From Macrostomum lignano (Eukaryota): a stretch of 64,000 nt of DNA. Both the position numbers and the translations under genes were made by a program. The stretch is from NCBI GenBank assembly GCA_002269645.1, contig NIVC01000126.1, forward strand, positions 124,001 through 188,000, written 5' to 3'. Within the stretch, counting starts at the first letter, position 1, and the number at the start of each line of letters is the position of its first letter. Below, piece by piece: positions 1 through 20,549 of this stretch. The notes below the pieces were generated by a model. That model saw only the letters and a list, made by a program, of their open reading frames with translations. It was not told where the DNA came from and did no database searches.

Positions 1-2
1 AA

Positions 3-820
3 GACATTACAGCAGCGATTAACGAGCTCATGGTGTCTATGCCTGTGCTGATGAGTCAGCCCGACTTGCCTGAGCGATCTTGGCTGAGTAGTGCTGCTCC
101 AGACACAACGTCCGACCGGGATCAAGAGCCGTCTAATCCGCAGCCAACCCAGCCATTGATGTCGTCCCAAAATGTCGGGCCTGAAGCGTCTGCTGCTAGC
201 GGTGACTTCTGTGGCATTGATGGCGCCGTGGAAAACTCTGCCGAGTCAATGAGTAAGGATTCTTTGACGAGTCTCTCAAACTATTTCAAAAATTTTTCTG
301 GATGCTTTCGTCTAATTCAGTGTGGACATGACGGGCCGTTTCTAACAAGAGTTCTCATAGGCTTGTGTTGCAGGACAATCGAATACAACTGATAGCAATT
401 ACGACTCAATCATGCTGCACCCGCTCTCCCGCAGCCGCTGAGCAGCCCTATGCAACTGACAGCTTTGGCGGCAGCGCTATGAGTCGTCGGCAATTAAACG
501 AAGCTCGCCCCCTGACACTGGAGGTTGACGTCGAGAACAGCTCGTCGGGCTTGCTGCCATTTTTTCCTGGCAGCTGCGATCGCCGCGGTGCGGTAGTCTC
601 CGCCCGCAGCGGCTGTAGCATAGAGATAACCGACCGCATCAGGCGCCGTCCGAATGGCGAGGAGAGGCGCGTCATCCGAGTCCAGGCGCCAAACATGTCG
701 GCATTGGAGAAGTGCGCTCAGCTTCTAGACTTGCACTTTCCTAGCATGGGCGCTAGAGCTCGGTTCCGGGAATGGCGAGAGCGAACTGACTTGCAGGCAA
801 AACAGCTTAGGTTTGGATGA
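3..820 (+). CDS. 3' part of a gene of unknown function (two open frames, 3-392 and 365-820, probably joined by a short intron or a frameshift)
   Basis: GC-rich coding-like sequence is open from the window edge, has a GTAAGG donor-like site at 253, and ends at TGA 818-820 before AT-rich sequence. No family was recognised with confidence. Confidence 0.35.
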
Positions 821-1598
821 AATTTATAGATTATTTTTGTTTCCAAATGGTTTAAACAAACTGTCTGTTAGAGATACTTTCTGCCTAAAAAGTTATGATT
901 AGCTATAGCCTTGATACCTTTGAGAGTGTGTCAAGCTGCTTTCCAGCTTATAGTTAGTATCGTAATATACATGTACATGTATTCTGGATAGAATAAATAT
1001 ATATAGAAGGTATCCGTCTCGCACATTATCAGCACTGATCAGCAGGGTGCAGCTGCAGTTTCGATTATTGTTTTCTGTGATAGCTGTGTAGTTTTTTGCA
1101 AAATTTTGTATTTTAGAAACCACATCAACACTACCAATTAACTTGGTCATTTCGATTCACAGATAGAGCCGTAAAGCTTTATTTCACAGGCTTTTCTGAA
1201 ATTTTTTAGTATAGTACATGTAAATATAGGCTTCCAGAAGATTTTGATGTAAAAGAATTTTATTTTAAATATACTAGTAGCTATGTAATAAAGGTAAAAT
1301 TTCATTACTAAACTAAGAAAACTTACTAAAATGCAGCAAAAGTGTATGTTGTTTAGTTTCTTGACTCCGCGACAATTAATAATGAATTTCAGCAAAGAAT
1401 AGAAAGTCATGCATTGATGTATTATAAGAACCTGTATTATTCCATGAATAGCATGTGCAGTTTTGCATGATGTCAAAGCCGGTCCGTTGGGATCCGCTTT
1501 CTCGGCCGCTATAGCCAGCTTTTTCGCTATACCGCTTTGACTTTTATGGCTCCTAGCTGCGTTCAATTAATCGGTCTGGCAAGAATAGCTCGTACATG

Positions 1599-4500
1599 AC
1601 TACGTAATGTGCAGATTGTTGTCGATTTTCAGAATTCTGACGCAAAAAACGCAAATTATACTACTATCTGAAAATGAAGTAAGTAGTATACAAAAACGCT
1701 ATCCTAAGCGTGATGTGGCAATATGTAGTCGTAATAATCCATGTGCTCATATATGTACATTAATTCCATGTTCAATAATCCCTATCTATCTCAAATTGGA
1801 TATGTACATTAATTCCATGTACATTAATCCATATCTCAAATTGTCTATCCCCAATTCTATATGTACACTCACATTAATCTACAGTGTCATCCCCAGACGG
1901 TCTGAGCGCGCACCAAAATTACATGTACAATACTACATGTACGCAGAGGCGAGAATTACTAATCTCATCTACTACCAAATGAGTCAACTAACAGTGTAGC
2001 TCACAACGTAAATGTATATTTCCAATGTACATTTCTCAGACAGATTTGAATAATACTGATCGGAGTCTATATGTACATCGATAGCCTCTATACTCATATC
2101 CGCTACATACTCCAAAAATTAGGTATGTACATTTTCACCCTCGGAGACTGTAGGTTTGAATATGCTGATAATTTATTCAAAATCACTTATAAAATACACA
2201 TACTTTCATATAGAGGCGGGCCTGTACAAACTCGCCAAGCGATGGGGTGGAGGTTGCGTCATCCAAGCCTCTCCCCAAGTCAGACCCCAAATGCAGGACT
2301 GTGTTGAAGCAGTGCTTTATATTTCTATATTGACAGTGTGGATGATACAATACCTTTAATTGGTAATTATCAACTGCTACTGCTTTACGGTATATCCTCA
2401 CCCCTCGAAGCTCCTATACTGAATGTTGAATCACCCTTTAACTCGGACCATAGTCAAATTCAACCCTGTTCGAAAACAGCCACCCCTCCGATGTTTACCA
2501 GACACAGCGCAGACCCCATAACAAATCGAGCTAAATTTTAACACTCGCCCCTGTTTTCTCTGTCCCCCTTCTAAATGCCAAGGAATTTCGACCCTCTCTC
2601 CATTTTCAGTGTACAGACAGATCTTTCCACAGCACAGACCATATATTAAACTTCAAAACCCCTCTCTTCTCCGATTACGTCATCCATGCCGCCCCAGTTA
2701 GCAAGAAACCAACTTTTAATGCACACATCAACCCCGCGAGCAAATCCGAGTCCGCCAACCTCTACCTGCATTGACAAACCCCAGCTGCATTTGTAAATGT
2801 ACACAGCCTATGAATCAGTGTCTCTACGCATGCAATTCTGATTTACTTGATTCTAAACTTTGTAAATTGTATAAGTCACCCTTGCGTTATACTAGAAGTA
2901 GTGAAGTCCACATATTTAAATACGTGAGGCTATTCAATTCTGCCTCTCCGCCTCCCCTACCTTCTCACTTCAAGCTTTCAGACTTGGTCTTTGAGACGGT
3001 CGGTTTAATCTGTTAGAAGCAGGAATGAATCATGCACTGACCTCTCCATACAAAGTAAAATTGGAATTTCAGACAAGAAATTTGGTTATTTTAAAAGCTA
3101 AATGACTAGAAATGCACATTTTTTCATTAAAATGCAGCTTTTTACAGTTTTTTTTACGATTTTAACCTTAAAATGCAGACTTTGTTGATCAAAATCAGTA
3201 GTTTCATCACTAGAAACCATACTTTCAACAGCTAATTTGTCCAAATGTCGCTTTCAACTTGACCTTAGACTGCTTTTAAGCAGGAATGAACCCCACACAA
3301 ACATCCACAAGCCAGCCCAAAATCATCCAAAGACATGGCTATTGAAGCCTAAATTGCTAGAAATGCGCATTTTTTCATAAGAAAACACAAATTTTCACAG
3401 TTTTTATGCATTTTTACGTTAAAATGCAGACTTTATTGATCAAAATCAGTAGTTTCATCACTAGAAACCATACTTTCAGCAACTAATTTGTCCAAATATC
3501 GCTTTCAACTTGACCTTAGACAGCTTTTAAGCAGGAATGAACCCCCCCCCCCCCCACGAACATACACAAGCTAGCCCAAAATCATCTAAAGACGGCTGTT
3601 GAAGACTAAATTGCTAGAAATGAGCATTTTTTCATAAGAAAACACAAATTTTCACAGTTTTTACGCATTTTTTTCGTTAAAATGCAGACTTTATTGATCA
3701 AAATCAGTAATTCATCACTAAAAACCACAATTTTAACACAAAATTATCACAAATGCTACTTCTGGAACTCTGAGACAGCTTTGAGCAGGAATTATAATAG
3801 CACACGGATTACCCGAGCCAGTCCAATATTCCACTGAAGCCAGGGTTTTTTAAAGCTGAATTTTTAGAATTGCTCATTCTTTCGTTTAATAAATGACAAT
3901 TTTCACAGTTTTATTATTTTCTAACGTTAAAATGCGAAATGTATTGGTCAAACTTAGTAGTTTCATCCCAAAAGCCATAATTTCAACCGCTAATTTGTCC
4001 AAATGCTGATTTCAAAGTTGGCAAGAGACAGCTTTCGAGCAGGAATGAGTCACACACTGATCTCCATATGCACACCCCGGCCCAAGTTGGAATTCCACCC
4101 AAGACATTTTCATTGAAAGCTAAATTACTAGAAATTGCACATTTTCGTTTTAAAAAGGTCAATTTTCACAGTTTTACTCTTTTTAACGTTAAAATGCTGA
4201 CTTTATTGAACAAAATTAATCACTTCATCAGCAGAAACCATAATTTTTACAACTTAATCGTCAAAAATGCTGTTTCATCATTCAAATGTATGTATTTGGT
4301 ACGTGTAATACCCCTCAAGAAGTCAGGGAAGGGATTATTCTTGAATATTGGGTTAAAACGCACAGTTTGCTATAAACCTAGCTATAATAATTTTAACATA
4401 TACAGTCGGCGAAGCGGCCCGTTGATTTCGATTGACATTTAAACTGTCCCTCCCAGACCTCTCTCTCTCCTTCTGCACCCACCGAGAAAAGTGACTCATG

Positions 4501-5016
4501 CGGCAAACAGCTGGACAGGTTTAGTGTATTACTGAATTGGCAAAACAACCAACACCCAATGGTCATATTAGACTCGTCTTCACAGCACAGACCCATGTAG
4601 AACAGAACCACTCGTCCCTGTCTCTCTGACCTTACCATTTCTAACTGTCAAAGAATTCCGACCCTCCCTCTCCAATTTCAGTGTACAAACAGATATTTTC
4701 ACAGCACAGCCTCATATATTGAGCCTCCTCCAACCAAAACCCTATCTTGATTCCGTCATCCACCTCCCCATAGGAGCAGTTAGCAAGAAACAAAATTTTT
4801 CGATGCACATATGAACACTGTGAACCATGCAAAATCGCACATCTACGGGTCGATTTTGATTGACAATTTAATACCTTTTGTTGATGCTGCTGTGTACAGT
4901 AGTCTTATTTCCGAAGCTCCTAGCAGTCATCTTTTAGATGTGGTGAATCAGTGTTGTTTTTGCCAACTTTACCTCTTGATTCATCCCCCAAATTCTTCAA
5001 CTCTGACCATATTCAA
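1599..5016 (+). repeat. Left inverted arm (3418 bp)
   Basis: Matches the reverse complement of 12614-16028. Identity stops after ...CTCTGACCATATTCAA at 5016. Confidence 0.95.
3020..4260 (+). repeat. Five diverged ~255-bp tandem units inside the left arm (mirrored in the right arm)
   Basis: CAGGAAT(G/T)A recurs near 3020, 3280, 3532, 3786 and 4040. Each unit also carries TAGAAAT, TTTTCACAGTTT, TTAAAATGC and ATCAAAATCAGTAG-like blocks. Confidence 0.8.
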
Positions 5017-6073
5017 ATGCAGCACAGTCCCTGTCTCTACTGCCGCCTCCGCCCGCGCCGCCGCCTCTCAATGAATGTAAAATAGGAGTGTTAGTTCATG
5101 TATTAATGCTCCTTGACCTGCAAAAATTATACGGTTGCTAGGCAGTGTCGTAACACAGGACAAATTTACAAAATGTCTCTATGAAAACTCATCTTCCTAC
5201 TGACAGTAGAGTTTGCAAAAATCAGTTCTTGGAATAATGCGACATTTTCGTGAAAATATTTAAACTGCTATATTGGGCCTATGACAGATTTTTATTGAGA
5301 AACTATCGTCATTTCCACAGAGAAAGATAAACATGTGAAGCTTTCGTGAAGATTAGAATCGTGAAGATTCGCTTGCATATGTACATCACATGTAAATGAA
5401 CATGTGATAAATCTGATGAGGAACTATGCACACATGCGCGAGTTGCCCCGGAAAGAGGTGAGATTGATAGATAATGAAAAATCAGTAGGAAAGAGAGAAT
5501 GAGGCTGCGTGACCACACTGTGAATCAAAAAGGTCCAACGGAGGTCCAAATTTATAATTTGGACTTTTGTCATCTAGAGGTCCATTTTTATAAAAATGAA
5601 AAAAGGCTTTCCATTCCATTAAAAAGCCATGTTTAACTACAATTTGTGTAGCAATTGTTGTATGATCAAATTCACGTAATGTTATCAGCAGTAACTGCAT
5701 CTACAACTGGAATTTGTTTAGGGGACAATTGGCTTTCGTTTTTGAAAATAACGAAAGGAAATGTTAGTGCTAATAACGTCGTGCAAAAACATTTACTGCT
5801 ATTGATAATATAGTATCTAAGAGTTAGGAGTCTTGGTTAATTAATAATTATGTAATTGTTCTGCATTAATATTTTGCCACTGTTATAATGCCTGCATTCA
5901 AAAGCAATACATACAGACTGGACAAACCGTCCATTTTTTCCAGCTTTTTTAAACTGATTTGCCCTCCCTGACGGTAGTGAAGTCAAAGCTTACGTTCACA
6001 CTTACTTCAGGCCTCTTTAATTAATGTAAAGTCGAATAGATATTAGATATTTTGTCTTAGAAATAGGATTTTC

Positions 6074-8621
6074 ATGGAACAGGATGTGGATAGGCATCTT
6101 GCTTCTAAATCTAACCATAAGAATAGTGAAATAAGTATAAAATGTACATTTTGTTCATTTTCATGTCAAAGTATTTTTAAGGTTATATCTCATATTAAGT
6201 TTACACATTCATTTGGATGTCACTGTTTTACCTGCCCTATCTTAGATTGTTTTTATAGTAGTGGTTCAATAGAAGCTTTAAGAGCTCATGCTTATCGTAT
6301 GCATAGTCAACTTACTAATGTTGATTCTTATGTTATGTCTAATTTAGAAAATGTTCTGAAAACTGAGGATGAAAAAAATGAAACAGTTGAAGTCTGTCCT
6401 GATCATTGTCAACCTAGTCTTAGTGGTACCAATGAGCCTAATAATGGCTTAAATGAAGAAAATGAAAGTATTCCAACAATAAATCCAGAAAAAATAACAT
6501 GTGATACCCTTCGAGACAATATAAGAAAAAACCTTGCTAAAAACTTTGTATACTATTATTTCAAATGTAAAAATGTATTTTTTATTTCTAAAGAAAAGTC
6601 TAATCAGTTATGTGAATTGGTAAAAGAAATGGTTTCACAATTTGCTCATGATTATCTTTGCCTATTTGAACAGTTTTTAAAGGAGGAATATCCATCTTTT
6701 AGTAAAAACTTAATTAATAATCAGTTTAATATGCAAGAAATGATTGATATCTCATTAGAATTTTTATTAACTGATTCAAAGGTCTTTGATATTCTAAAAC
6801 ATCAATATAACTTAGTTCAGCCAATAGAAATTGTCCACCCAGAGACGGGTTCTAAAATCCAATATATCCCAATAGCTGAAATGCTTGCTTCAATAATAAA
6901 AAATGAACATTTGATGAAATTTTTTGTTGAGCCATGTATCAATAATTGTAACTTTTTTACATCAACCTATTTTAAAGAATGTATATCATCATTGGTAACT
7001 AGTGACAGTGGGATTTTTTTGAAACTGTACTCAGACGAAATTGAAGTTTGTAATCCAATTGGATCAGCCAAGACAAAGCATAAGCTATGTGTTATTTATT
7101 ATAGTATTCTTAATTTTCCTGAATACTTGAATTCATCATTAGAATTATCTTTCTTGTCAACTATTTTTTCTGAGTCTACAATAAAGAAAGCAGGCTTACA
7201 ATTTTGCTTGTCTCCATTAATTGCTGAGCTTAATGATCTATATTATAAGGAATTTGAAATAAATACTTCTTTAACACTGCCTGTTGTGGCTTGCTTTATG
7301 ACTGGGGATAATCTATCTATGCATCAAATGTTAGGTTTACAGAAATGCTTTTCTAGTGGGTATGTATGCAGGTTTTGTTATAAGGAATATAGACAGCTTT
7401 GTAGTATAGATATTCAATGTTTAGATAAGCTCTTTCAATTTAATTATAGGACCCATTTATCAAATATCAATGATTCACAACAATTAAACAATGGCTTTGT
7501 TAGAAATTCAGCTTTTGAGGGTTTGTCTTATATTGATTTGCAATATTTTTTCCCACCTGATATTATGCATGATGATTTGGAAGGATTTTCACATCTGGTT
7601 GTGTGTCTTGTACTATTAAATGCTATGGAAAAAAATCATATAAGCATGGAATTTATAAATGAACAATTTAGCAAAATTTATGATGTATCACTTCCTAAGC
7701 TAAGCAAATATAACATAAAAAACTTTCATTTGCCATGCACTGCTAGTCAAATGATAGTCATCTTACAATATTTTGGTTTACTTTTTGGGGATTTATTTGA
7801 TTATGATGATGACATTTGGATATTATTCTGCAACCATAAGCTTTTTCTTAATATTATATTATCACCATATTATGATAAGGATGTTGATATTGATTATTTT
7901 AAGTTTTTAGTAGCAGCACAACTTGAAACTATATATAAATACACTGACTTTAACCCAAAATACAAATGTAAACTACATTACATCTGCCATTATCCAGAAT
8001 TATACCATTATTTTAGTGGTCTAAGGTATCTTTGGTGCATGCGAAGTGAGGCCCAACATCAGGTAATAAAGAATATAAGTAGACAATGTAAAAACTATAA
8101 TAATGTTGCCTTTACATGTGCAAAAAACTTTCAAATTCAGAAGGCTTTAGTTGTTACACATTTTATGCCCCATGATCTAAAAGAAGCAAAGTGTAGTAGT
8201 ATAATTAAAATCAGTTCAATTTTAACAACTCCTGAGAAAATCAAACTAAGTAATATACTCAATGTCAAATTTGATTCATTAGGCCAGATTTGCTTCTCAA
8301 CCACAGTTCTAAATTTTAGAGGATTTCATTATAAAACTTGGCTTGGCTATATTTAAAGATAGCTATATTGATTTAATAATGATTTCTTGCATCATTAAGG
8401 TCACAAACAAATGGGTTCTCATTTGCAAAAAGATTAAAGCTACATTTTCAACCCATTATAATTGTTATTTATGTACTATTTTAAATGATGACACTATATT
8501 TTGTATGCCTAGCCAGCATATTGTTCACCAGCAAGTTCCTCTTATGCTTTATCGTGGCCAACTTTATGCTTCATTAAAATACCATCCATATGTTGATATG
8601 CTGAATGAAAAGTCAGTTTAA
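6074..8621 (+). CDS. EnSpm-type DDE transposase with N-terminal C2H2-like zinc fingers; +1 frameshift at ~8338
   Basis: The 760-aa ORF has CTFC..H..H and CPILDC..H..H fingers and motifs typical of animal EnSpm transposases (LYSDEIEVCNPIG..KHKL, GDNL..H....CRFC, PPDIMHDDLEG, WCMRSEAQH). The C-terminal domain continues in frame 8343..8621. Confidence 0.85.
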
Positions 8622-9166
8622 AAAAATAATAGCAATAAAAGTAGTCTAATATGTTCCAACTTGTAGCTCAATGATATATACTTTTTAGTAAACTTATCAA
8701 CAAACTTTTTCTGTTATGCCCCAGCAGTTGAATAGTTGTTTTGTCTGAACTAATTGTGACTTAAATACTTAATAATGTCAGTGCCAAGGCTGCGTGTGGC
8801 ACCTTGAGGCATGGCAAAGAGTTTAGCACTGGTATGTGCTCTCTGGCTCTAGCTAAAAACTGGTCTATAGGCATTTGTCCTTTTTATGATGGATGGGCTT
8901 GCCCGTCCTGACTAGGCTAAGCTTAGCAAGTGTTGGATGCCGGTTTTGCCATTTCTCGGCCCAAAATGTGCAGTTATACATATTGTATATATTTTCTGCA
9001 TGCACAAATCATGCAACCAATAGAAAATAGGCGAAAACAAAACAAAAAAGCTTTGGTAAAACCACACGACATCACTACATTCTTACAGCTTAACAACAAT
9101 TTTGGACGTAATGTGTCTTACATACCAGATTAACTCTGATGTCCTTAACATAATTTTTCACTTCAG

Positions 9167-10777
9167 CTTCGAATCTGCACTGGTGACAAGTCAAGAAAGA
9201 AGCTTGTTTGTGCTTCTTCGCTTGACCAGTTGCGATTAAAAGGATGCGAGAAGCTCGGCATTGCTGATGCGGATAATGTCCGGATTGTTACCAAAGATGG
9301 CTTCGAAATCGATGACGACGATTTAATACCAGAAATTGCAAAGGAAGCAAAGTTTGTTTACTTTTTGCTTCAAGGCGAGCTTTTGGACTGTGTATCAAAG
9401 CCATCAAATGAGACGCCTTTCATGCCCAGCACTCCTGCCAGACAGCAAGACAGTAGCTCCGAACTTGTAGGATCTACTGGAGTGAGCATGCCAGGTGGAG
9501 CAGCTGCTGGTAGCTTACCGTGGCCTGAGGTCTATACCCTGCCTCGGATGGGCGAATTGAGTGACGCTCTTCGCGAACTTCGGCTCAATCCAGAAAAGGG
9601 TGCAGAGTTCAAAGTTAACCCAACATTTGTAAACCGGTTTCTAAAGTTCATTATTGAGGACGTCTTTCAACAGTTCAAGTCTGAAGACAATCCATATTTG
9701 TCTGGTGTTGAAATTCGCGATATCTGCTGTGCCATAATTGCAACCTATTCTGGCCTCCGGGACGATTCGCCTGAAGGGTTCCGTTTTTGGCGAATTAAGA
9801 TTTGCCGTCGCTTGAAGGACCTACGCAGCAGAAAGCTTACGTCATTCACAAGCCCAATCGTTCTGCAAATGCGTGGCAAGCATGGGAGGAAGCGCAAAGT
9901 AACTGCTGCTGCTGCTGCATGTGCTCCCACTGGCGACACTTCAGCTGATGAATTGGGTGATGATGGTGTCGACGAACCCATTGACGACTCTGGTGATGAT
10001 GAGCAACCACCATTTGAGCATCGACCAGTCGAGCCCGACTGTCGAAGTGTCATGAATAAAAGTGTAGATTTTGAAAATGATGGCACCGTACCCCCCAGCC
10101 ATGAACAGCGACGAGAGCGACTGAATTCTGATTTTGGCAGAGTCAGTATTTCGGAAGTGCTGGATGAAATGCGTGTGCTATTTCCTGTGCGAATTTCACG
10201 ATGCCAGGATAAAACTGTTGCCGAGGAAGTTGAACTTTACCGACCGCTAACTTTATTGCCTGTCATTCTTCAAGAGACTCATCTGATGATTGAGGAGTAC
10301 AATAAAAGCAAGACAGACTATATTTGTGCATCAGGTCCAAATGAGATTCGGACTAACATTACGGCAGCGCTGATGAAAATATACAACAATAGAAAACACC
10401 TAAAAAACTACAAGTTCTGCAAAAAATATGTGGATGCCGTCGACTCTGATGACGAAAAATTGTGTGCTGCAGTCTGTCTTCTTCTTGGTCGGCTGAAGAT
10501 TGATGCCGAGAAGATTTTTTGCGATGGTCTTCCCGTAAGAATTGTTCGAGACGAGAACAGCAAGTGGTCCGGCGTTTCTGTCAATGGCGCTACCCTGGTG
10601 TTTGATAATGCAGCGGATACCGTCATTGTCTTCATCATCGTGTATGTTGCTTTCAACCTACAGCATGTCCCCTTCCTGGAACCATTCCTCGAGACGATTG
10701 AGGTTCTGGCCAAGCTGCGCAGCCGGTCTGCTGTTTCACGTAGCTCCGCCAAGACTGTTATTGCATCTTTTCTGTAG
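9167..10777 (+). CDS. EnSpm accessory ORF2 (putative TnpA equivalent) with a CIDE-N-like N-terminal domain
   Basis: The frame is open from the acceptor TTCAG at 9166 (in-frame TAA upstream at 9146-9148): LRICTGDKSRKKLVCASSLDQLRLKGCEKLG..VRIVTKDGFEIDDDD. The central helical block resembles the SAMD3-like ORF2 of animal EnSpm elements. The first exon was not located. Confidence 0.7.
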   Translation, partial: LRICTGDKSRKKLVCASSLDQLRLKGCEKLGIADADNVRIVTKDGFEIDDDDLIPEIAKEAKFVYFLLQGELLDCVSKPSNETPFMPSTPARQQDSSSELVGSTGVSMPGGAAAGSLPWPEVYTLPRMGELSDALRELRLNPEKGAEFKVNPTFVNRFLKFIIEDVFQQFKSEDNPYLSGVEIRDICCAIIATYSGLRDDSPEGFRFWRIKICRRLKDLRSRKLTSFTSPIVLQMRGKHGRKRKVTAAAAACAPTGDTSADELGDDGVDEPIDDSGDDEQPPFEHRPVEPDCRSVMNKSVDFENDGTVPPSHEQRRERLNSDFGRVSISEVLDEMRVLFPVRISRCQDKTVAEEVELYRPLTLLPVILQETHLMIEEYNKSKTDYICASGPNEIRTNITAALMKIYNNRKHLKNYKFCKKYVDAVDSDDEKLCAAVCLLLGRLKIDAEKIFCDGLPVRIVRDENSKWSGVSVNGATLVFDNAADTVIVFIIVYVAFNLQHVPFLEPFLETIEVLAKLRSRSAVSRSSAKTVIASFL

Positions 10778-11499
10778 TTGCTGTTTCATTGCATTGCCTT
10801 CATTTTCAAAAACCAATTAGTTGAGCTATCTGACTTTCTTGTGCTCGAGTAGTTTTATCCCTAGATATAAGATATTCCTACAGGATAGATAATGGAATAA
10901 TGGAAATGGCATAATGGAATTATGGAAATGGTGTATTTTTGCAGACACAATATCATAGTTTATTTAGTCCATTTTGCGTTCCAAATGTTGGATTTGCATT
11001 TTTAGAAATGAGAATGCATTTTTGCACTTTGCAGTTTTTCTGTCTGTGGGATAATAAAAATGAAGGGTGCACAAAACAAACATTTAATTCAATGGGTATC
11101 CATTTGCCACATTATAAAGTCTGTTTAAATCCTTGTTGGAATGTTGTCAAATCGCAGCCGGGGTGTTCGTGCACTTTTACTTTTTGTGTGTTCTATAATG
11201 TGGCTTTCTGTGGACTTTTGTCCAGTCTTCTATGCTATACAAGGTGTGTTTTGTTAACTTTTTTGCACATCAAAATGGAAACTGTATGCCTCTGCTTTTC
11301 ATGTGTGCATGCTAGAGCTTTTTACTTTACTGTTGCTGGTGTAAAGACGTTTATAATGTGTACATTATATTTTATATGCAACTCATTACTTGCAAGTGAT
11401 GAGTTGTTAATATTACAGAAAACATTCTTGGCCTTCAGTGACTTCCTTTATTAATTCATGAAATCGACCCTCCAAAAGGGCATGCAATGATTGCAATCC

Positions 11500-11870
11500 T
11501 TAAAGCTCGGACCCCTCTAAAATAGACCTTTTAATTTGGATCTAAAAATGCATATTTTTTAGAGAGAAATAGTCTTTCAGAGGTCCAAAAATCGACGCTT
11601 TGGGCCCTTTAATTTGGACATTTTTCTAACAATTTGGACCTTAAAAAGCGGACCTCAAAAATTGGACCTTTTTTAAAAATGGACCTTCAGAGGTCCAAAA
11701 ATATCGACGCTGCGGACCTTGCAATTTGGACCTTATTCTAACAATTTGGACCTCAAAAATGGACCTCAAAAATTGGACCTTTTTAAAAATGGACCTTCAG
11801 AGGTCCAAAAATATCGACGCTGCGGACCTTACAATTTGGACCTTGTGTGGACCTTTTTTTGGACCTTTTT
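11500..11870 (+). repeat. Subterminal GGACCT/AGGTCC repeat field of the EnSpm right end
   Basis: Dense AATTTGGACC and AAATGGACC motifs, including a duplicated block (about 11650-11720 repeated at 11761-11830). Confidence 0.85.
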
Positions 11871-12613
11871 GCACCGCAGTGCACCCACCCCATTATCCTG
11901 TCTTTCCGTTGCATGGCAGCACGTAATTAAATGTGTCAAGTGTACAATTGATTCAATCGATTACTCGTTTATACGCAAAGCATCGAGAGAGTTTTTAATT
12001 GCATCCAAACTTTCTGACTAATGCCTTCGTGTGTTCCAAAGAAGGAGACACTGATTCATAGGGTGTGTACATTGACAAATGCAATTACAGCACGCAGGGT
12101 AGGGTTGGCTTTGGTAGACGCGCGGATTTGCTTGGTTCGCATTGTTCATATATGTGCATCGAAATTTTTTTCTTGCTAACTGCTTCTATGGAGATGTATA
12201 GATGACGTAATCAGAGATAGGGCTTTGGTTGGGGGAGGCTGGGTCCGTGCTGTGAAAAGATCTGCTTGCTTCGTCAAAATGTACATTGGGATTGAGAGAG
12301 AGGCCGGTCGAATTTCGTTGACAACTAGAAATGGAAAGGTTTGGTCAGAGAATAGGGGTGTATGTGTGTTTTGGCTTTATTCAAAATGGTCTGTGCTGCG
12401 AAGACGAGTCCATTGACCATTGGGTGTTTGCTGTTTTGCCAATTCAGTATACTGAACCTGTTAAACTGATTGCCTCATGAGTCACTTTTCTGGGGTATGT
12501 GTAGGAGAGAGAGGCCTGAGAGAGACAAGGGCTCGATTTGGGTGGGGTCCTCTGGCCCCATTCGTATTGGCTAATTTGGCGAATTGGCAAATCTACTTGC
12601 ATGGGTTAAATTA

Positions 12614-15600
12614 TTGAATATGGTCAGAGTTGAAGAATTTGGGGGATGAATCAAGAGGTAAAGTTGGCAAAAACAACACTGATTCACCACATCTAAAAGA
12701 TGACTGCTAGGAGCTTCGGAAATAAGACTACTGTACACAGCAGCATCAACAAAAGGTATTAAATTGTCAATCAAAATCGACCCGTAGATGTGCGATTTTG
12801 CATGGTTCACAGTGTTCATATGTGCATCGAAAAATTTTGTTTCTTGCTAACTGCTCCTATGGGAGGTGGATGACGGAATCAAGATAGGGTTTTGGTTGGA
12901 GGAGGCTCAATATATGAGGCTGTGCTGTGAAAATATCTGTTTGTACACTGAAATTGGAGAGGGAGGGTCGGAATTCTTTGACAGTTAGAAATGGTAAGGT
13001 CAGAGAGACAGGGACGAGTGGTTCTGTTCTACATGGGTCTGTGCTGTGAAGACGAGTCTAATATGACCATTGGGTGTTGGTTGTTTTGCCAATTCAGTAA
13101 TACACTAAACCTGTCCAGCTGTTTGCCGCATGAGTCACTTTTCTCGGTGGGTGCAGAAGGAGAGAGAGAGGTCTGGGAGGGACAGTTTAAATGTCAATCG
13201 AAATCAACGGGCCGCTTCGCCGACTGTATATGTTAAAATTATTATAGCTAGGTTTATAGCAAACTGTGCGTTTTAACCCAATATTCAAGAATAATCCCTT
13301 CCCTGACTTCTTGAGGGGTATTGCACGTACCAAATACATACATTTGAATGATGAAACAGCATTTTTGACGATTAAGTTGTAAAAATTATGGTTTCTGCTG
13401 ATGAAGTGATTAATTTTGTTCAATAAAGTCAGCATTTTAACGTTAAAAAGAGTAAAAACTGTGAAAATTGACCTTTTTAAAACGAAAATGTGCAATTTCT
13501 AGTAATTTAGCTTTCAATGAAAATGTCTTGGGTGGAATTCCAACTTGGGCCGGGGTGTGCATATGGAGATCAGTGTGTGACTCATTCCTGCTCGAAAGCT
13601 GTCTCTTGCCAACTTTGAAATCAGCATTTGGACAAATTAGCGGTTGAAATTATGGCTTTTGGGATGAAACTACTAAGTTTGACCAATACATTTCGCATTT
13701 TAACGTTAGAAAATAATAAAACTGTGAAAATTGTCATTTATTAAACGAAAGAATGAGCAATTCTAAAAATTCAGCTTTAAAAAACCCTGGCTTCAGTGGA
13801 ATATTGGACTGGCTGGGGTAATCCGTGTGCTATTATAATTCCTGCTCAAAGCTGTCTCAGAGTTCCAGAAGTAGCATTTGTGATAATTTTGTGTTAAAAT
13901 TGTGGTTTTTAGTGATGAATTACTGATTTTGATCAATAAAGTCTGCATTTTAACGAAAAAAATGCGTAAAAACTGTGAAAATTTGTGTTTTCTTATGAAA
14001 AAATGCTCATTTCTAGCAATTTAGTCTTCAACAGCCGTCTTTAGATGATTTTGGGCTAGCTTGTGTATGTTCGTGGGGGGGGGGGTTCATTCCTGCTTAA
14101 AAGCTGTCTAAGGTCAAGTTGAAAGCGATATTTGGACAAATTAGTTGCTGAAAGTATGGTTTCTAGTGATGAAACTACTGATTTTGATCAATAAAGTCTG
14201 CATTTTAACGTAAAAATGCATAAAAACTGTGAAAATTTGTATTTTCTTATGAAAAAATGCGCATTTCTAGCAATTTAGGCTTCAATAGCCATGTCTTTGG
14301 ATGATTTTGGGCTGGCTTGTGGATGTTTGTGTGGGGTTCATTCCTGCTTAAAAGCAGTCTAAGGTCAAGTTGAAAGCGACATTTGGACAAATTAGCTGTT
14401 GAAAGTATGGTTTCTAGTGATGAAACTACTGATTTTGATCAACAAAGTCTGCATTTTAAGGTTAAAATCGTAAAAAAAACTGTAAAAAGCTGCATTTTAA
14501 TGAAAAAATGTGCATTTCTAGTCATTTAGCTTTTAAAATAACCAAATTTCTTGTCTGAAATTCCAATTTTACTTTGTATGGAGAGGTCAGTGCATGATTC
14601 ATTCCTGCTTCTAACAGATTAAACCGACCGTCTCAAAGACCAAGTCTGAAAGCTTGAAGTGAGAAGGTAGGGGAGGCGGAGAGGCAGAATTGAATAGCCT
14701 CACGTATTTAAATATGTGGACTTCACTACTTCTAGTATAACGCAAGGGTGACTTATACAATTTACAAAGTTTAGAATCAAGTAAATCAGAATTGCATGCG
14801 TAGAGACACTGATTCATAGGCTGTGTACATTTACAAATGCAGCTGGGGTTTGTCAATGCAGGTAGAGGTTGGCGGACTCGGATTTGCTCGCGGGGTTGAT
14901 GTGTGCATTAAAAGTTGGTTTCTTGCTAACTGGGGCGGCATGGATGACGTAATCGGAGAAGAGAGGGGTTTTGAAGTTTAATATATGGTCTGTGCTGTGG
15001 AAAGATCTGTCTGTACACTGAAAATGGAGAGAGGGTCGAAATTCCTTGGCATTTAGAAGGGGGACAGAGAAAACAGGGGCGAGTGTTAAAATTTAGCTCG
15101 ATTTGTTATGGGGTCTGCGCTGTGTCTGGTAAACATCGGAGGGGTGGCTGTTTTCGAACAGGGTTGAATTTGACTATGGTCCGAGTTAAAGGGTGATTCA
15201 ACATTCAGTATAGGAGCTTCGAGGGGTGAGGATATACCGTAAAGCAGTAGCAGTTGATAATTACCAATTAAAGGTATTGTATCATCCACACTGTCAATAT
15301 AGAAATATAAAGCACTGCTTCAACACAGTCCTGCATTTGGGGTCTGACTTGGGGAGAGGCTTGGATGACGCAACCTCCACCCCATCGCTTGGCGAGTTTG
15401 TACAGGCCCGCCTCTATATGAAAGTATGTGTATTTTATAAGTGATTTTGAATAAATTATCAGCATATTCAAACCTACAGTCTCCGAGGGTGAAAATGTAC
15501 ATACCTAATTTTTGGAGTATGTAGCGGATATGAGTATAGAGGCTATCGATGTACATATAGACTCCGATCAGTATTATTCAAATCTGTCTGAGAAATGTAC

Positions 15601-16028
15601 ATTGGAAATATACATTTACGTTGTGAGCTACACTGTTAGTTGACTCATTTGGTAGTAGATGAGATTAGTAATTCTCGCCTCTGCGTACATGTAGTATTGT
15701 ACATGTAATTTTGGTGCGCGCTCAGACCGTCTGGGGATGACACTGTAGATTAATGTGAGTGTACATATAGAATTGGGGATAGACAATTTGAGATATGGAT
15801 TAATGTACATGGAATTAATGTACATATCCAATTTGAGATAGATAGGGATTATTGAACATGGAATTAATGTACATATATGAGCACATGGATTATTACGACT
15901 ACATATTGCCACATCACGCTTAGGATAGCGTTTTTGTATACTACTTACTTCATTTTCAGATAGTAGTATAATTTGCGTTTTTTGCGTCAGAATTCTGAAA
16001 ATCGACAACAATCTGCACATTACGTAGT
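12614..16028 (-). repeat. Right inverted arm (3415 bp)
   Basis: Spot comparison with the left arm found three homopolymer-length differences (C14 vs C11, T4 vs T5, C4 vs C3) and a few substitutions. Confidence 0.95.
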
Positions 16029-16120
16029 TACATGGCACATATAGAGGCCCTTATTGTTCCAAAATCAGCTTGGTACGTGTGGACAGTGAAAGAATCGTGA
16101 GCTCAACCAGGCTGGGATGA

Positions 16121-17182
16121 TTAAACCATGGATTGCTCCTCTGCTTTAAATTTGGGGGTGCAATTTTGCCCCGCGAAGCCCCCGCGTTCGCACCGATTGG
16201 CTACTGAAGATTCCTTAGTTGTCTATGGCAAAAACGTACTGTAAGATACAGTTCTTATGTACGGAAGTCTCCTAAATATGAATACATGTAACAATTTTAT
16301 AGCTAGCTGATTAACTAAATAGATTTTCTTTGAAACTTTCGTATTCAGTTTTCCACGCACATGCACTTCTCCTCAGTTGTCTGAATTACTACTCCAGAGG
16401 CAAATGCCTTTTACACTTGGCCTTTAGAAATCTTTCGACCCGATGGCGTCGCTTTCTAGATAGAATAAGGCTTCGATCTTTTGTTTGAATCAGCTGCTTT
16501 AAGCTTCGTTTGGCAAATGGATGCAAATCTCCGCGGTGTTATTGTCCAACTGCATGAGTCTTCAGCATCAAAGCGCTGCAGGACTGGTGGAGAATCGGGC
16601 CATTTCGTACTTCTGAACCGCTCCCGGTCTCAATATTTTTCTACTCTTACTGTACATTCATGTACCAGCTGAGCTTGGCTACCCTGTGCCAAAGTAAGAA
16701 AATTTTCGTTCTTGAATGGAGCTAGCTCACACAGGTGTACCTTTTTTGATATGTCGGTGCGAATTCTCGATCTGTTTTATAATAATTTCAACGTTGTCGA
16801 GCCAAATAGCCAGCCCTTGTGCATCTTTGACAGGATAAGCAAATAAAGACACGCCATCGCAGTTGTTTACATATTACAAATTTGATGTGCACGATTTTGG
16901 CCTGCATGCCCCAACGTACATGTACTTACAGCTTTTTTTAAATCATTGTAGCCATCTGCAGGACACTGCATGACCGACGAAATGCGGACTCAATTTGACA
17001 GCTCTCAGGGAAGGGTTTACTATGTATGAAACAACCCATTGCAGCAATTACACACAACTTTTTTTATAACCATATAGACAACTAATTAAGGAATCTTCAG
17101 TAGCCAATCGATGCGAACGGGGGCCTCGCGGGGCAAAATTGCAAACTTTGAATTTAATGCAGACGAGCAATCCATGGCTTTA
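16121..17182. mobile_element. ~1.06-kb non-coding element with ~110-bp imperfect inverted ends (MITE-like)
   Basis: 16123-16228 aligns with the reverse complement of 17070-17181 (CCATGGATTGCTC...GCAATTTTGCCCCGCGA...GATTGGCTACTGAAGATTCCTTA). No clear TSD. Confidence 0.6.
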
Positions 17183-17397
17183 TTCAGAAAAGGTAGTTAA
17201 ATATTATTTTGTCAATGTAACAAATATCTAGTATAATTGAGGATTGTTCTCCATAATAGGCGATTTTTGTAAAAAGATATAGTATTTTTGAAAGCGCGTG
17301 ATATTTTAAAGCGTGAAAAACAAGCATTAACACACTTCGAACGAACTTAACGTCTAGCGATTAACGACGAATTAAATAGGAAATTAAAAAGACAGTA

Positions 17398-17503
17398 AAT
17401 GAATAAACAACTGAAAAGCGGATTTATTACACTGCTGATATATCTGTTTCAATGAATAAACAACTGAAAAGCGGATTTATTACACTGCTGATATATCTGT
17501 TTC
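17398..17503 (+). repeat. Exact 53-bp tandem duplication
   Basis: AATGAATAAACAACTGAAAAGCGGATTTATTACACTGCTGATATATCTGTTTC occurs twice, starting at 17398 and 17451. Confidence 0.9.
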
Positions 17504-17989
17504 AGTTTGCATAACTGTTTTAGCTATTCATGACTTCATATATTTTAGCTACACCAGTGAGCTCTTTTCTGACTCTTTTTTCATTTGTAGCATATCCTAT
17601 CTTGTGTACTTGCTTGTCAAAATACTTTTTGTTACAAGTTTTTTTAAATTTTATTGTTTACAATTTAAACAAAGGAAAGTAGATTTTTAATAAATCGGCG
17701 AGATAAGATTTAAAATCCAACCATACGAAATTGTAAAAACGTCTTTAAGAACAGCGTTTTGAACCCTGGCTTTCTTAATGTTTTTGACAGTATTACGTAT
17801 TTTTTTCTTTTTGAGTGCTGACAGATATATGTTAGTCAGATCAGGTCAATCATTGATACTGTGTACCGTATGCAGTTTAGTAGGCCTACTTTTTATTATA
17901 GTAGCACTACCAGTAGGGGCCAATACAATATAAGCCTGCGTGCTGTGTATGGCTAGTCATAGGCTCATTTTATTTATTATAGGGGCCTA

Positions 17990-20479
17990 GAACTAGAAAC
18001 CATCGCGCAGCGAGACACTCTGGTGGTGCTTGGCGATCTGAATGCGGTGATGCGTCGATCCGCTAGCGCCCCTTATGTGACTTCACGCGAGAATCCAAAC
18101 ACTGATGCGCTGGTGAGTCTGACAGAGCAGCACGATCTGGTGTCCGCAAATACCACCTTCCGCAAACCTGCCAGCCGGCTCGCGACCTTTACCGGCTGTA
18201 AACGGAGAAGGCGAAATGCAACCGGCCGTAACGCGACTTGCAGGCTAGCGCAGTTAGACCACGTGCTACTGCGCACTCGCGAACGCCGCCGAGCATTGAA
18301 TTGCGACACCGTCAGACCACTGGCCGTGGGGTCAGACCATAAGTTGCTGTTCTGTGACTTGCGTCTCCGTGACCCCCTGTACCGACCACCGAAGAAAAGA
18401 CCGAGGCGTTTCTTTAGAGCACTGCGGAACCCAGCAACTAGGAACCGCTTCTCTCGCGCCTTCTCCACCGCGCTGGGCGACACCCACAACGCTCAGTATG
18501 GTGACATATGCGACGCAATCCACACCGCGGCGGAAAGCACGCTACCACTCGTGCGTCCACCGCAGCGCTCACAACCAGTGTGGATGAGCGACCCAGCGAT
18601 CAGAGAGGCCCAAGATCGAGTGCAGCGACTCAGGAGGAGCAGGCACACAACAGACGAGGCGGAAAAGGCCCTCGCCATTGTCTACAAAGAGCAGCAGCTG
18701 GCTGCCGTGAGCGAGGCCATCCGCGCCGTCACCTCCGCCGCCCCGGACAGGAAAAGCGGCACCGTGTGGACTGCCATCAACACCCTCACTGGCAGGAAGC
18801 AACGCACGGCGCTCAACCTGGTTGGGGACACGCCGGATGAGCGCAAGAACAGCCTGCGGGACTTTTTCGCTAGCATAGTGAATGCGCCACCACCTGCGCT
18901 CCCTGATGTGCTGGCGCTGCCCCCTGACACGCCACTGCCGCCTCCGCATCATTTCTGTACCGGCCATGTGACCGCAATCGATGTTTGTCAGCTCGCCAAG
19001 AAGATCCCAGGCGGCAAGGCAACGGGTCCCGACGAAGTTCCCAACGAGGTGCTCAGACTGCCCAAGGTCGCCCAGGAGATCGCCAGGGTGATCAACAACG
19101 TTCTCGATACTGGCGTCGCACCTCCGGAGTGGACCCGAGCACATATCGTCGGAATCCCCAAGAAGCCGGGCACCAACAAGATTGAAGAACATCGGGGCAT
19201 CTCCCTGATGTCCTGTGCCGCCAAGCTGCACAACAAGCTGCTACTGTCGCGCTTGCAGCCAGTGCTGGACCCTTACCTGCGGTACGAGCAGAATGGGTTC
19301 CGGCCACGACGTGGTACAGTCACGCAAATTCTGGCGCTCCGGAGAATTATCGAGGAATCGCGCATTCGCCAGTCGGACCTTTTCTGTCTGTTCATCGACT
19401 TCCTGAAGGCTTTCGACTCGGTGGCTCGAGGCGTGATTCCACTAGTTCTCCGAGCCTACAACGTGCCAGAGAAACTGATTGCAGCAGTGATGGCGCTCTA
19501 CCACGACACGCACGCTGCTGTGATCACACCTGACGGCCTTTCCGACTTCTTCACCACCTCATCCGGAGTCCTGCAAGGAGACACCCTCGCTCCCTTCCTG
19601 TTCATCCTCATCTTGGACTGGGTGCTGCGGACAGGACTACCGGACAACTCGGACGGCTACATCCTATGCAGGCGAACGAGCAGCCGGCACCCGGAGAAGC
19701 GGCTGGCAGTCCTCGGATATGCTGATGACCTCGCCCTGCTGGCATCCACTGCTGCTGGTGCTCAACGCCTCCTCGACGGCCTAGCTGCTGCCGCTGCGAA
19801 GGTTGGCCTTAAGATCAACGCCAAGAAGACGGAGGTCCTGACTGTGCCAGCCGATCTGCCAGCGGTCATCCGCCTTCCCAGCATGGACAGCGCAACGGCA
19901 GCACCGCTCCCCCGATGTGAGCAGTTCCGGTACCTTGGTGGTCTCGTGCCCAGCGTCCAGGAGGACCTGCGGCGTCGCAGAGGGCTTGCGTGGGCGGCTT
20001 TCCGCTCAGTGCGCATCGTGCTCCAAAGCGACGCCCTGCCAGACCAGCTGAGAACCAGACTGTTCCAGGCGGTGGTGGAAACGGTGCTCTTCTACAACGC
20101 CGAGACCTGGACCATGACGGATGTGCTGGAGCGCCAGCTGGACGCGGCGCACTCCAGCCTGCTGCGCGCTGCCTTCAGCGTGCACCGTCACGCCGAACAC
20201 GTCACCAACCAGGCTCTCTACCAGCGGGCCAAGCTGAGCCCTCCCAGCGTGACCCTGCGACAGCGCCGCCTGAAGCTGGCGGGCCACGTCATTCGCGCCG
20301 AGTCCTACTGCCCGGAGCCGCTGCAGGAGGTCTTGCTGTACACGCAGCAGGGCCCGTTCCGGCGGGGGCAGGCGCGGACCCGGAGGTTCGTCGACTGTCT
20401 GACAGAAGACGCCAGGGCGCCTGATCAGATCAATGGCGCTACCTTCATCAGAGACTGCGCAGCTAAGCGTGCTTTTTGA
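17990..20479 (+). CDS. APE endonuclease (C-terminal part) plus reverse transcriptase ORF of the LINE
   Basis: APE motifs LGDLNA, QLDHVL and SDH. RT motifs RGISL, QNGFR, FIDF.KAFDSV, GVLQGD and YADD. No internal stop. Confidence 0.92.
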   Translation, partial: ELETIAQRDTLVVLGDLNAVMRRSASAPYVTSRENPNTDALVSLTEQHDLVSANTTFRKPASRLATFTGCKRRRRNATGRNATCRLAQLDHVLLRTRERRRALNCDTVRPLAVGSDHKLLFCDLRLRDPLYRPPKKRPRRFFRALRNPATRNRFSRAFSTALGDTHNAQYGDICDAIHTAAESTLPLVRPPQRSQPVWMSDPAIREAQDRVQRLRRSRHTTDEAEKALAIVYKEQQLAAVSEAIRAVTSAAPDRKSGTVWTAINTLTGRKQRTALNLVGDTPDERKNSLRDFFASIVNAPPPALPDVLALPPDTPLPPPHHFCTGHVTAIDVCQLAKKIPGGKATGPDEVPNEVLRLPKVAQEIARVINNVLDTGVAPPEWTRAHIVGIPKKPGTNKIEEHRGISLMSCAAKLHNKLLLSRLQPVLDPYLRYEQNGFRPRRGTVTQILALRRIIEESRIRQSDLFCLFIDFLKAFDSVARGVIPLVLRAYNVPEKLIAAVMALYHDTHAAVITPDGLSDFFTTSSGVLQGDTLAPFLFILILDWVLRTGLPDNSDGYILCRRTSSRHPEKRLAVLGYADDLALLASTAAGAQRLLDGLAAAAAKVGLKINAKKTEVLTVPADLPAVIRLPSMDSATAAPLPRCEQFRYLGGLVPSVQEDLRRRRGLAWAAFRSVRIVLQSDALPDQLRTRLFQAVVETVLFYNAETWTMTDVLERQLDAAHSSLLRAAFSVHRHAEHVTNQALYQRAKLSPPSVTLRQRRLKLAGHVIRAESYCPEPLQEVLLYTQQGPFRRGQARTRRFVDCLTEDARAPDQINGATFIRDCAAKRAF

Positions 20480-20549
20480 CAATGTCCCCCCCTTTCCTGA
20501 CCACTTGTGGCCGGTGGCCATTGTATTTTATTGTATTATTGTATTATTG
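17990..20549 (+). mobile_element. 5'-truncated RTE-clade non-LTR retrotransposon
   Basis: 10-bp TSD TAGGGGCCTA (17980-17989 and 20550-20559). Short TATTG(TAT) tandem tail. The ORF is open from the first base of the element. Confidence 0.9.

What the first reader, a model, noticed from the sequence alone, without database searches (positions are those of the whole stretch)
1593..16034. 14.4-kb foldback element with 3.4-kb near-identical arms, a 6-bp TSD and ACTAC...GTAGT ends that fit no familiar family well
Seen: arms 1599-5016 and 12614-16028 are reverse complements. Spot checks found only about three substitutions and three homopolymer-length differences. TACATG sits exactly outside both ends. 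Without the nested EnSpm element, the unit is ~8.06 kb, about 85% of it TIR, and I see no credible ORF. Known: 6-bp TSDs with long TIRs typify Polinton/Maverick elements, but those usually end AG...CT and have much shorter TIRs; CACTA elements make 2-3-bp TSDs. Inference: this is a young non-autonomous giant-TIR element of an uncharacterised family, mobilised in trans or possibly moving as a composite with its cargo.
Basis: partly seen in the sequence, partly recalled or inferred. Interest (0 to 1): 0.9.

Follow-up and report, generated by a model that had tools for sequence, protein, structure and literature searches.

The report
Giant-armed foldback transposon in Macrostomum
A 14.4-kb stretch with two near-identical 3.4-kb inverted arms is a real, recent, non-coding transposon insertion in the flatworm Macrostomum lignano: two sister copies of the locus lack it exactly and keep a single TACATG. 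Its family stays unassigned because no second copy could be searched for.

Summary
Arms 1599-5016 and 12614-16028 are reverse complements that differ by 3 substitutions and 3 homopolymer-length changes. TACATG abuts both ends. The window is Macrostomum lignano assembly Mlig_3_7, contig NIVC01000126.1. Two other contigs of that assembly carry the same locus with the whole unit absent and one TACATG left. The arms and the two inner pieces have no coding signal. Each arm has a unique end with short repeated motifs, about five 251-bp tandem units, and an inner part. The cargo (5516-11881) is an independent nested CACTA-type (CMC) transposon with its own CACTG ends and 2-bp duplications, and it has two further copies elsewhere outside any foldback. 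It is neither part of the outer element nor its mobiliser. The ends (AC..GT) fail the published end motifs of Polinton/Maverick and IS3EU. Dada is excluded, and hAT6 cannot be tested. Copy number, an autonomous partner and read support could not be checked. Verdict: a real foldback-type non-autonomous DNA transposon of unassigned superfamily, of moderate interest.

The parts
1593..1598 (.). Left copy of the 6-bp target site duplication (TACATG)
   Evidence: It is single in the empty sites L002 and L003.
1599..5016 (+). Left arm (3418 bp), starting ACTACGTAATGTGCAG. The first ~1.4 kb is unique, and its end carries short repeated motifs: ACTAC/GTAGT 4 times in the first 150 bp, ATGTACA 7 times in the first 300 bp.
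3018..4277 (+). Array of about five tandem units of ~251-258 bp (72-88% alike) inside the left arm. It is mirrored at about 13352-14609 in the right arm.
5017..5515 (.). Left inner piece (499 bp). It is unique, non-coding, and unlike both the arms and the right inner piece.
5516..11881 (+). Nested, independent CMC/EnSpm-type transposon (6366 bp) with CACTG...CAGTG ends, flanked by CA on both sides. It is not part of the outer element.
   Evidence: Copies at 98.7% (L001) and 99.2% (L006) identity have the same ends at other loci, with 2-bp duplications CA, CA and TG.
6074..8356 (+). Open 760-aa ORF of the nested element, the putative transposase. Relatives carry PF02992 Transposase_21 or PF18759 Plavaka.
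9185..10777 (+). Second ORF of the nested element. The assembly annotates it as a 530-aa product with a CIDE-N hit. The ORF from the first listed start runs 9230-10777.
11884..12613 (.). Right inner piece (730 bp), non-coding. It holds old diverged arm-like stretches; 12114-12527 is 73% identical to arm segment 12784-13184, in the same orientation.
12614..16028 (-). Right arm (3415 bp), the reverse complement of the left arm, ending ...CATTACGTAGT
16029..16034 (.). Right copy of the 6-bp target site duplication (TACATG)

Best explanation
This is a non-autonomous class II (DNA) transposon of foldback architecture in Macrostomum lignano. Two 3.4-kb near-identical inverted arms make up about 85% of it. 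Each arm consists of a unique end with short repeated motifs, about five 251-bp tandem units, and an inner part. The arms enclose a small non-coding loop. The unit integrated as one piece into an intergenic site 773 bp downstream of a gene's stop codon. A 6-bp staggered cut was filled in to give the TACATG duplication. Shown: the inverted repeat, the exact 6-bp duplication, the precise empty site in two other copies of the locus, the lack of coding capacity, and the independence of the nested CMC element. Inferred: a transposase or integrase encoded elsewhere recognises the ACTAC... ends or the subterminal motifs and moves the element in trans. The arms are kept alike either because they descend from a recent parent copy or through conversion between arms. 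The insertion happened after the three locus copies (the subgenomes of this neopolyploid) diverged. The superfamily is unassigned. The 6-bp duplication narrows it to enzymes that cut 6 bp apart, but the ends match none of the end motifs published for such groups.
For: The inverted repeat is 3419 columns long at 99.77% identity, with 3 substitutions and 3 homopolymer indels. TACATG abuts both ends, and the repeat cannot be extended on either side. In L002 (NIVC01000814.1) and L003 (NIVC01004450.1) window 1-1598 and window 16029-17989 abut with a 6-base overlap, giving a single TACATG. The window is 100% identical to NIVC01000126.1 of the same assembly, and M. lignano has three subgenomes with about 2% SNP divergence. 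No Pfam family reaches threshold in 22 stop-to-stop segments of the arms and inner pieces. No protein homologue was found for the longest arm ORF. The terminal 20-mer, and the 11-mer with one mismatch, are absent from the inner arm ends, so the arms are not two complete elements. ACTAC occurs 4 times in the first 150 bp against 0.32 per 150 bp in the rest of the arm, and ATGTACA occurs 7 times in the first 300 bp. Tandem arrays lie inside the arms. The nested element has its own ends and 2-bp duplications at three loci.
Against: Only this one copy is known. No other copy of the arms or ends lies in the roughly 125 kb of M. lignano DNA I could fetch, and the genome could not be searched by DNA. 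Repetitiveness, constancy of the TSD length and an autonomous partner are therefore all untested. All three locus copies come from one PacBio/Canu assembly, so the internal structure (arm length and identity) has no independent support. With a single copy, part of the 6-bp repeat could in principle be a chance match of element ends to the target, which would make the real duplication shorter.
Confidence: 0.7

Rival explanations
1. It is a non-autonomous member of a known superfamily that makes 6-bp duplications and carries ordinary TIRs: hAT6 (a hAT subgroup) or IS3EU/GingerRoot. Its arms have simply grown unusually long.
For: The 6-bp TSD is shown. Papers state that IS3EU/GingerRoot usually make 6-bp TSDs, and that hAT6 is a hAT group with 6-bp TSDs placed among animal hAT lineages.
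Against: Complete IS3EU families are said always to end TA..TA, and GingerRoot TA..TA or TG..CA; fungal ones end TAYGG..CCRTA. This element ends AC..GT. No transposase remnant of any kind was found. The hAT6 end motifs were not available to me, so that half is untested.
Confidence: 0.15
2. It is a non-autonomous derivative of a Polinton/Maverick element.
For: The TSD is 6 bp, as in Polintons, and the TIRs are long.
Against: Published vertebrate Maverick ends are 5'-(AG)3//(CT)3-3' or 5'-(AGT)2//(ACT)2-3', and their TIRs are 46-1447 bp. Here the 5' end is ACTACG and the 3' end is CGTAGT, which has the opposite strand polarity, and the arms are 3.4 kb. No trace of polymerase, integrase, capsid, ATPase or protease genes was found. 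The end is absent from the viral contig collection.
Confidence: 0.06
3. A smaller element with short TIRs inserted and made the TSD. The 3.4-kb arms arose afterwards, in place, by inverted duplication or conversion of one side onto the other.
For: The arms differ by only 0.09% in substitutions. The loop keeps an older, 73%-identical layer of arm-like sequence on one side only. This shows that internal duplication has happened in this lineage.
Against: The arm identity runs to the very last base at both outer ends. Both inner arm ends join unique DNA cleanly. Long arms with internal tandem arrays are the normal inherited state of foldback-type transposons (my own knowledge, plus the titles listed). 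Nothing here distinguishes the two histories.
Confidence: 0.1
4. The arm length or identity is an assembly product of noisy PacBio reads, or the whole structure is a one-off rearrangement rather than a mobile element.
For: The assembly is Canu on PacBio CLR reads with Pilon polishing. The three indels between the arms are homopolymer-length differences typical of such data. Only one copy is known.
Against: A missing-adapter palindrome would have no 7.6-kb asymmetric spacer and would not join two different flanks. Both outer junctions match a precise empty site with a 6-bp duplication, which rearrangements do not give. The arms carry three real substitutions, so they were not copied from one consensus.
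Confidence: 0.06
5. The unit moves as a composite driven by the transposase of its nested CMC/EnSpm cargo.
For: The cargo has two open ORFs, one of them transposase-like.
Against: The cargo's family uses CACTG...CAGTG ends and makes 2-bp duplications at three of three loci. The outer unit ends ACTAC...GTAGT with a 6-bp duplication. The cargo also occurs without any arm sequence at L001 and L006.
Confidence: 0.02

Closest known systems
Foldback-type DNA transposons of insects (FB of Drosophila melanogaster, Galileo, Tetris)
   Same: Most of the length is taken by very long inverted arms. The arms contain tandem sub-repeats around a small loop. There is no coding capacity in most copies, other elements can sit in the loop, and the elements are flanked by a target duplication.
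   Different: The TSD here is 6 bp. From my own knowledge, not tested here, FB makes 9 bp and Galileo 7 bp. The ends are unrelated as far as I can tell. The host is a flatworm. The tandem units are much longer (about 251 bp). No autonomous relative is known.
Polinton/Maverick
   Same: A 6-bp TSD and long TIRs.
   Different: The end motif and its polarity differ. The arms are 2.4 times the longest TIR reported in vertebrates. None of the core genes is present.
IS3EU/GingerRoot
   Same: A 6-bp TSD and the presence of TIRs.
   Different: Their ends are TA..TA (rarely TG..CA); here they are AC..GT. No transposase is present.
hAT6 (hAT subgroup with 6-bp TSD)
   Same: A 6-bp TSD, and the group is found in animals.
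   Different: hAT TIRs are usually short (my own knowledge). No hAT transposase or dimerisation-domain remnant was found. The end motifs could not be compared.
Dada
   Same: A 6-7-bp TSD.
   Different: Dada elements lack TIRs and insert into small RNA genes. This element has 3.4-kb TIRs and sits in intergenic DNA with no Rfam or tRNA hit.

Membership tests
Polinton/Maverick | 6-bp target site duplication | tested here: met
   TACATG lies on both sides and is single in the empty sites.
Polinton/Maverick | End motifs 5'-(AG)3//(CT)3-3' or 5'-(AGT)2//(ACT)2-3' (vertebrate elements) | tested here: not met
   The ends are 5'-ACTACG...CGTAGT-3'. The published motifs are quoted.
Polinton/Maverick | Core genes (protein-primed polymerase, integrase, capsid proteins, ATPase, protease), or sequence identity to an element that has them | tested here: not met
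   No Pfam hit at threshold in 22 segments of the arms and inner pieces. Identity to an autonomous element could not be tested.
IS3EU/GingerRoot | 6-bp TSD | tested here: met
IS3EU/GingerRoot | TA..TA termini (occasionally TG..CA) | tested here: not met
   The ends are AC..GT. The rule is quoted.
hAT6 | 6-bp TSD | tested here: met
hAT6 | hAT transposase, or ends shared with a coding hAT6 element | not testable with these tools
   No coding remnant in the element. No hAT6 reference and no DNA search of the host genome were available.
Dada | Insertion into multicopy small RNA genes, and no TIRs | tested here: not met
   No Rfam or tRNA hit in the window. The TIRs are 3.4 kb. The family features are quoted.
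CACTA/EnSpm-Mirage-Chapaev (outer element) | CACTA/CACTG termini and a 2-4-bp TSD | tested here: not met
   The bases before ACTAC are G on the left and A on the right-end reverse complement, so there is no leading C. The TSD is 6 bp.
CACTA/EnSpm-Mirage-Chapaev (nested element 5516-11881) | CACTG...CAGTG termini with a 2-3-bp TSD | tested here: met
   Three copies have identical ends and flanks CA/CA, CA/CA and TG/TG.
CACTA/EnSpm-Mirage-Chapaev (nested element 5516-11881) | Transposase of the Transposase_21/Plavaka type | tested here: inconclusive
   The 760-aa ORF itself has no Pfam hit. Its homologues at E values from 1e-48 to 1e-22 carry PF02992 or PF18759.
Foldback (FB-type) transposons | Long inverted arms built partly of tandem repeats around a short loop | tested here: met
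Foldback (FB-type) transposons | Family-specific TSD length (9 bp for FB, from my own knowledge) and a related transposase | tested here: not met
   The TSD is 6 bp. No transposase is present. So this is a likeness in architecture only, not membership.

The most novel reading that the evidence does not exclude
The element is the first seen representative of a so far undescribed lineage (family or superfamily) of animal DNA transposons. That lineage would combine a 6-bp staggered cut, AC..GT ends and kilobase-scale foldback arms. Its autonomous partner in Macrostomum would encode a transposase or integrase not yet linked to these features.
Probability: 0.15. Interest if true: 0.6.

Novelty: new member of a known kind. 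Interest (0 to 1): 0.35.

Why it matters
It gives a clean, dated example of very recent DNA-transposon activity in Macrostomum lignano, a regeneration model and the flatworm with stable transgenesis. Within 20 kb, one of three subgenome copies has gained this 14.4-kb unit (an 8-kb foldback element with a 6.4-kb CMC element nested inside it) and a LINE. This illustrates how insertions drive the large structural divergence between the subgenomes reported for this species. A 3.4-kb perfect inverted repeat is also a potential source of hairpin RNA and of assembly and rearrangement trouble. If the family turns out to have an unknown partner enzyme, it would add to the catalogue of eukaryotic transposon superfamilies. 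As it stands it is one unclassified non-autonomous element.

Tried and rejected
1. Exact look-ups of window ORFs found nothing: arm ORF 1607-1999 and the signal-peptide-peptidase-like gene with two starts. Nine arm and cargo ORFs are not in the protein collection.

2. A homology search with the longest arm ORF gave no hit.

3. The terminal 26-mer is absent from viral contigs. The terminal 20-mer hit one soil-type metagenome contig (L004), but the match is 21 nt with no extension and 55% GC. That is the chance level for a collection of that size.

4. The arms and both inner pieces, each taken apart, matched nothing in the other M. lignano DNA held: L001-L003 and the rest of the window. The left arm also matched nothing in the upstream part of L005 or in L006.

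5. A composite of two complete elements is rejected, because the end motif is absent from the inner arm ends.

6. A weak Adeno_PIX hit (15 bits against a cut-off of 27) falls in an alanine-rich ORF, and a weak herpes-domain hit scores 13.6 bits. Both are below threshold among 20 queries and are taken as chance.

7. An alternative partition of the junction gives a 2-bp CA duplication with ends TGACTACG and TAACTACG. It is possible on one copy but needs four extra chance matches (about 0.4%), so it is rejected as the less likely reading.

8. The cluster of the left-flank protein has one member on two contigs, so no further locus copies could be reached.

9. Random sampling of more flatworm loci through multi-copy proteins was considered and dropped as too costly for the expected yield.

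Slip, stated as required: while reasoning I wrote from memory a short stretch of an ordinary host protein (the start of a vertebrate Rab3 GTPase-activating protein) and a few short terminal motifs of transposon families. The gene identification rests on the Pfam hits, and the end motifs in this report are those quoted by papers.
Full report
**1. Observation**

A scan for inverted repeats finds four abutting blocks of 100% complementarity that together make arms 1599-5016 and 12614-16028. Aligned end to end, the arms give 3419 columns at 99.77% identity. The differences are 3 substitutions and 3 gaps of 3, 1 and 1 bases, each inside a run of one base.

The left junction reads ...GCTCG TACATG ACTACGTAATGTGCAG... 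and the right junction reads ...CTGCACATTACGTAGT TACATG GCACA.... The direct repeat is exactly 6 bp, and the inverted repeat stops exactly at it. The 20-nt end occurs nowhere else in the window, against 0.01 expected by chance.

**2. Where the window comes from**

The 760-aa ORF in the middle is 99% identical to a Macrostomum lignano protein. A 573-aa member of that protein's cluster is 100% identical to the window's ORF. The contig that encodes it, NIVC01000126.1 of assembly GCA_002269645.1 (Mlig_3_7), is 100% identical to window 1-18356. The window is therefore about 124,001-188,000 of that contig. The assembly was built by Canu from PacBio reads and polished with Pilon.

**3. The empty site**

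The last exon of a gene ends at window 820. A representative search with that exon returned a 414-aa protein that is 98% identical. That protein is encoded on two other contigs of the same assembly, fetched as L002 (NIVC01000814.1) and L003 (NIVC01004450.1).

- In both contigs, window 1-1598 aligns at 96.8% and window 16029-17989 at 99.85%.
- The two alignments overlap by six bases. L002 reads ...GAATAGCTCGTACATGGCACATATAGAGG..., with one TACATG and no foreign base.
- L002 and L003 are 99.75% alike.

M. lignano is a neopolyploid with three subgenomes (S, L1, L2). They differ by about 2% in SNPs and far more through long insertions. So the element is present in one of three copies of the locus. 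The junctions, the duplication and the empty site together are the signature of a transposase- or integrase-type insertion. They are not the signature of an inverted duplication made by replication or repair.

**4. Anatomy**

Each arm has three parts:
- about 1.4 kb of unique sequence at the outer end;
- about five tandem units of 251-258 bp (roughly 3018-4277, mirrored at roughly 13352-14609), 72-88% alike;
- about 0.74 kb of inner sequence.

The outer end is rich in short motifs. ACTAC/GTAGT occurs four times in the first 150 bp, against 0.32 per 150 bp in the rest of the arm. ATGTACA occurs seven times in the first 300 bp. I take these as candidate protein-binding sites, which is inference. 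The second motif resembles the target sequence (cGTACATGg); I note this without building on it.

Between the arms lie a 499-bp left piece and a 730-bp right piece, on either side of the nested element.
- Compared apart, the two pieces are unlike each other.
- The left piece is unlike the arms.
- The right piece holds old arm-like stretches (73%, 95% and 68% identity) in the orientation of the right arm. Internal duplication therefore has a history in this lineage.

Twenty-two stop-to-stop segments of at least 55 aa from the left arm and both inner pieces gave no Pfam family at threshold. The longest arm ORF has no homologue among 5.8 billion clusters. The element cannot encode its own enzyme.

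**5. The cargo**

Window 5516-11881 begins CACTGTGAATC... and ends ...CACCGCAGTG. Copies at 98.7% (L001) and 99.2% (L006) identity have exactly the same ends at unrelated loci. Their flanks are CA/CA and TG/TG, and the window copy has CA/CA. None of these loci holds arm sequence.

Homologues of the 760-aa ORF carry Transposase_21 or Plavaka domains. The second ORF has a CIDE-N hit. So the cargo is an independent nested element of the CACTA/EnSpm-Mirage-Chapaev group. It has its own 2-bp cut and cannot explain the outer 6-bp duplication or the outer ends. Both of its ORFs are open, and I counted no breaks.

**6. Mechanism**

The best reading is a foldback-type non-autonomous DNA transposon, moved in trans by an enzyme that cuts the target 6 bp apart. 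It is recent: the right flank differs from the empty copies at 3 of 1961 positions, and the arms differ from each other at 3 of 3415.

Rivals:
- A known 6-bp-TSD superfamily with overgrown TIRs.
- A Polinton derivative.
- A short-TIR element whose arms grew in place after insertion.
- An assembly product.
- A composite driven by the cargo.

The last is contradicted by section 5. The assembly reading is weakened by the asymmetric 7.6-kb spacer, the two distinct flanks, the exact empty site and the real substitutions between the arms. It cannot be closed without reads.

**7. Comparison with known families**

| Family | Published features | This element |
|---|---|---|
| IS3EU/GingerRoot | 6-bp TSD, TA..TA ends | TSD met, ends not met |
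| Polinton/Maverick | 6-bp TSD; in vertebrates ends (AG)3//(CT)3 or (AGT)2//(ACT)2 and TIRs of 46-1447 bp | TSD met; end motif not met; polarity not met; arm length outside the range; no core genes |
| Dada | 6-7-bp TSD, no TIRs, sits in small RNA genes | excluded |
| hAT6 | hAT subgroup with 6-bp TSD | TSD met; untestable beyond that |
| Insect foldback elements | long arms with tandem repeats around a small loop | architecture alike; different TSD length; no shown relation |

I therefore file it as a new member of a known kind, a long-armed non-autonomous TIR transposon, with the superfamily open.

**8. Limits**

No tool could search the flatworm genome by DNA. Copy number, constancy of the TSD, an autonomous partner and read support all remain untested. 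The filled and empty sites come from one assembly.

Noticed in passing
window 17990-20537: A GC-rich (about 60%) non-LTR retrotransposon with an 818-aa reverse-transcriptase ORF (RVT_1) is also absent from both empty-site contigs. It is flanked by a duplication of about 10-12 bp (…TAGGGGCCTA) and has a TTGTA-like repeat at its 3' end. It is a second recent insertion in the same locus copy.
   Followed up: partly
window 16120-17183: A MITE-like unit of about 1.06 kb with interrupted terminal inverted repeats (33 nt at 88% and 40 nt at 93%) lies 90 bp to the right of the foldback element. It is present in the empty-site contigs too, so it is older.
   Followed up: partly
window 9185-10777; L001 12571-13506; L006 12573-14162: The second gene of the nested CACTA-type transposon carries an N-terminal CIDE-N domain hit at all three loci where a copy of the element was fetched. 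CIDE-N is normally a domain of cell-death/DNA-fragmentation-factor proteins, so it is an odd passenger for a transposon.
   Followed up: no
window 5516-11881 and L001, L006: The nested transposon family is itself very young. Three copies are 98.7-99.2% identical with open ORFs and 2-bp duplications (CA, CA, TG), rather than the 3 bp usual for CACTA elements.
   Followed up: yes
window 24636-34775: The right-hand neighbour is a Rab3 GTPase-activating protein catalytic-subunit gene (Pfam hits at 31900-32406 and 34284-34772). ORFs at about 28.1-29.3 kb and 30.7-31.9 kb, between its coding pieces, have highly repetitive translations, which suggests long tandem repeat arrays there.
   Followed up: no
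L005 1688-4186 versus L002 8951-10579: The left-flank gene is annotated with a 601-aa product on the contig that carries the insertion but a 414-aa product on the two contigs without it. The stop codon (window 818-820) is the same. The left flank is 3.2% diverged while the right flank is only 0.15% diverged.
   Followed up: no
L004 777-797: A 1.1-kb JGI metagenome contig shares a 21-nt exact match with the element's end and nothing more. That is a chance match at the size of the collection.
   Followed up: yes
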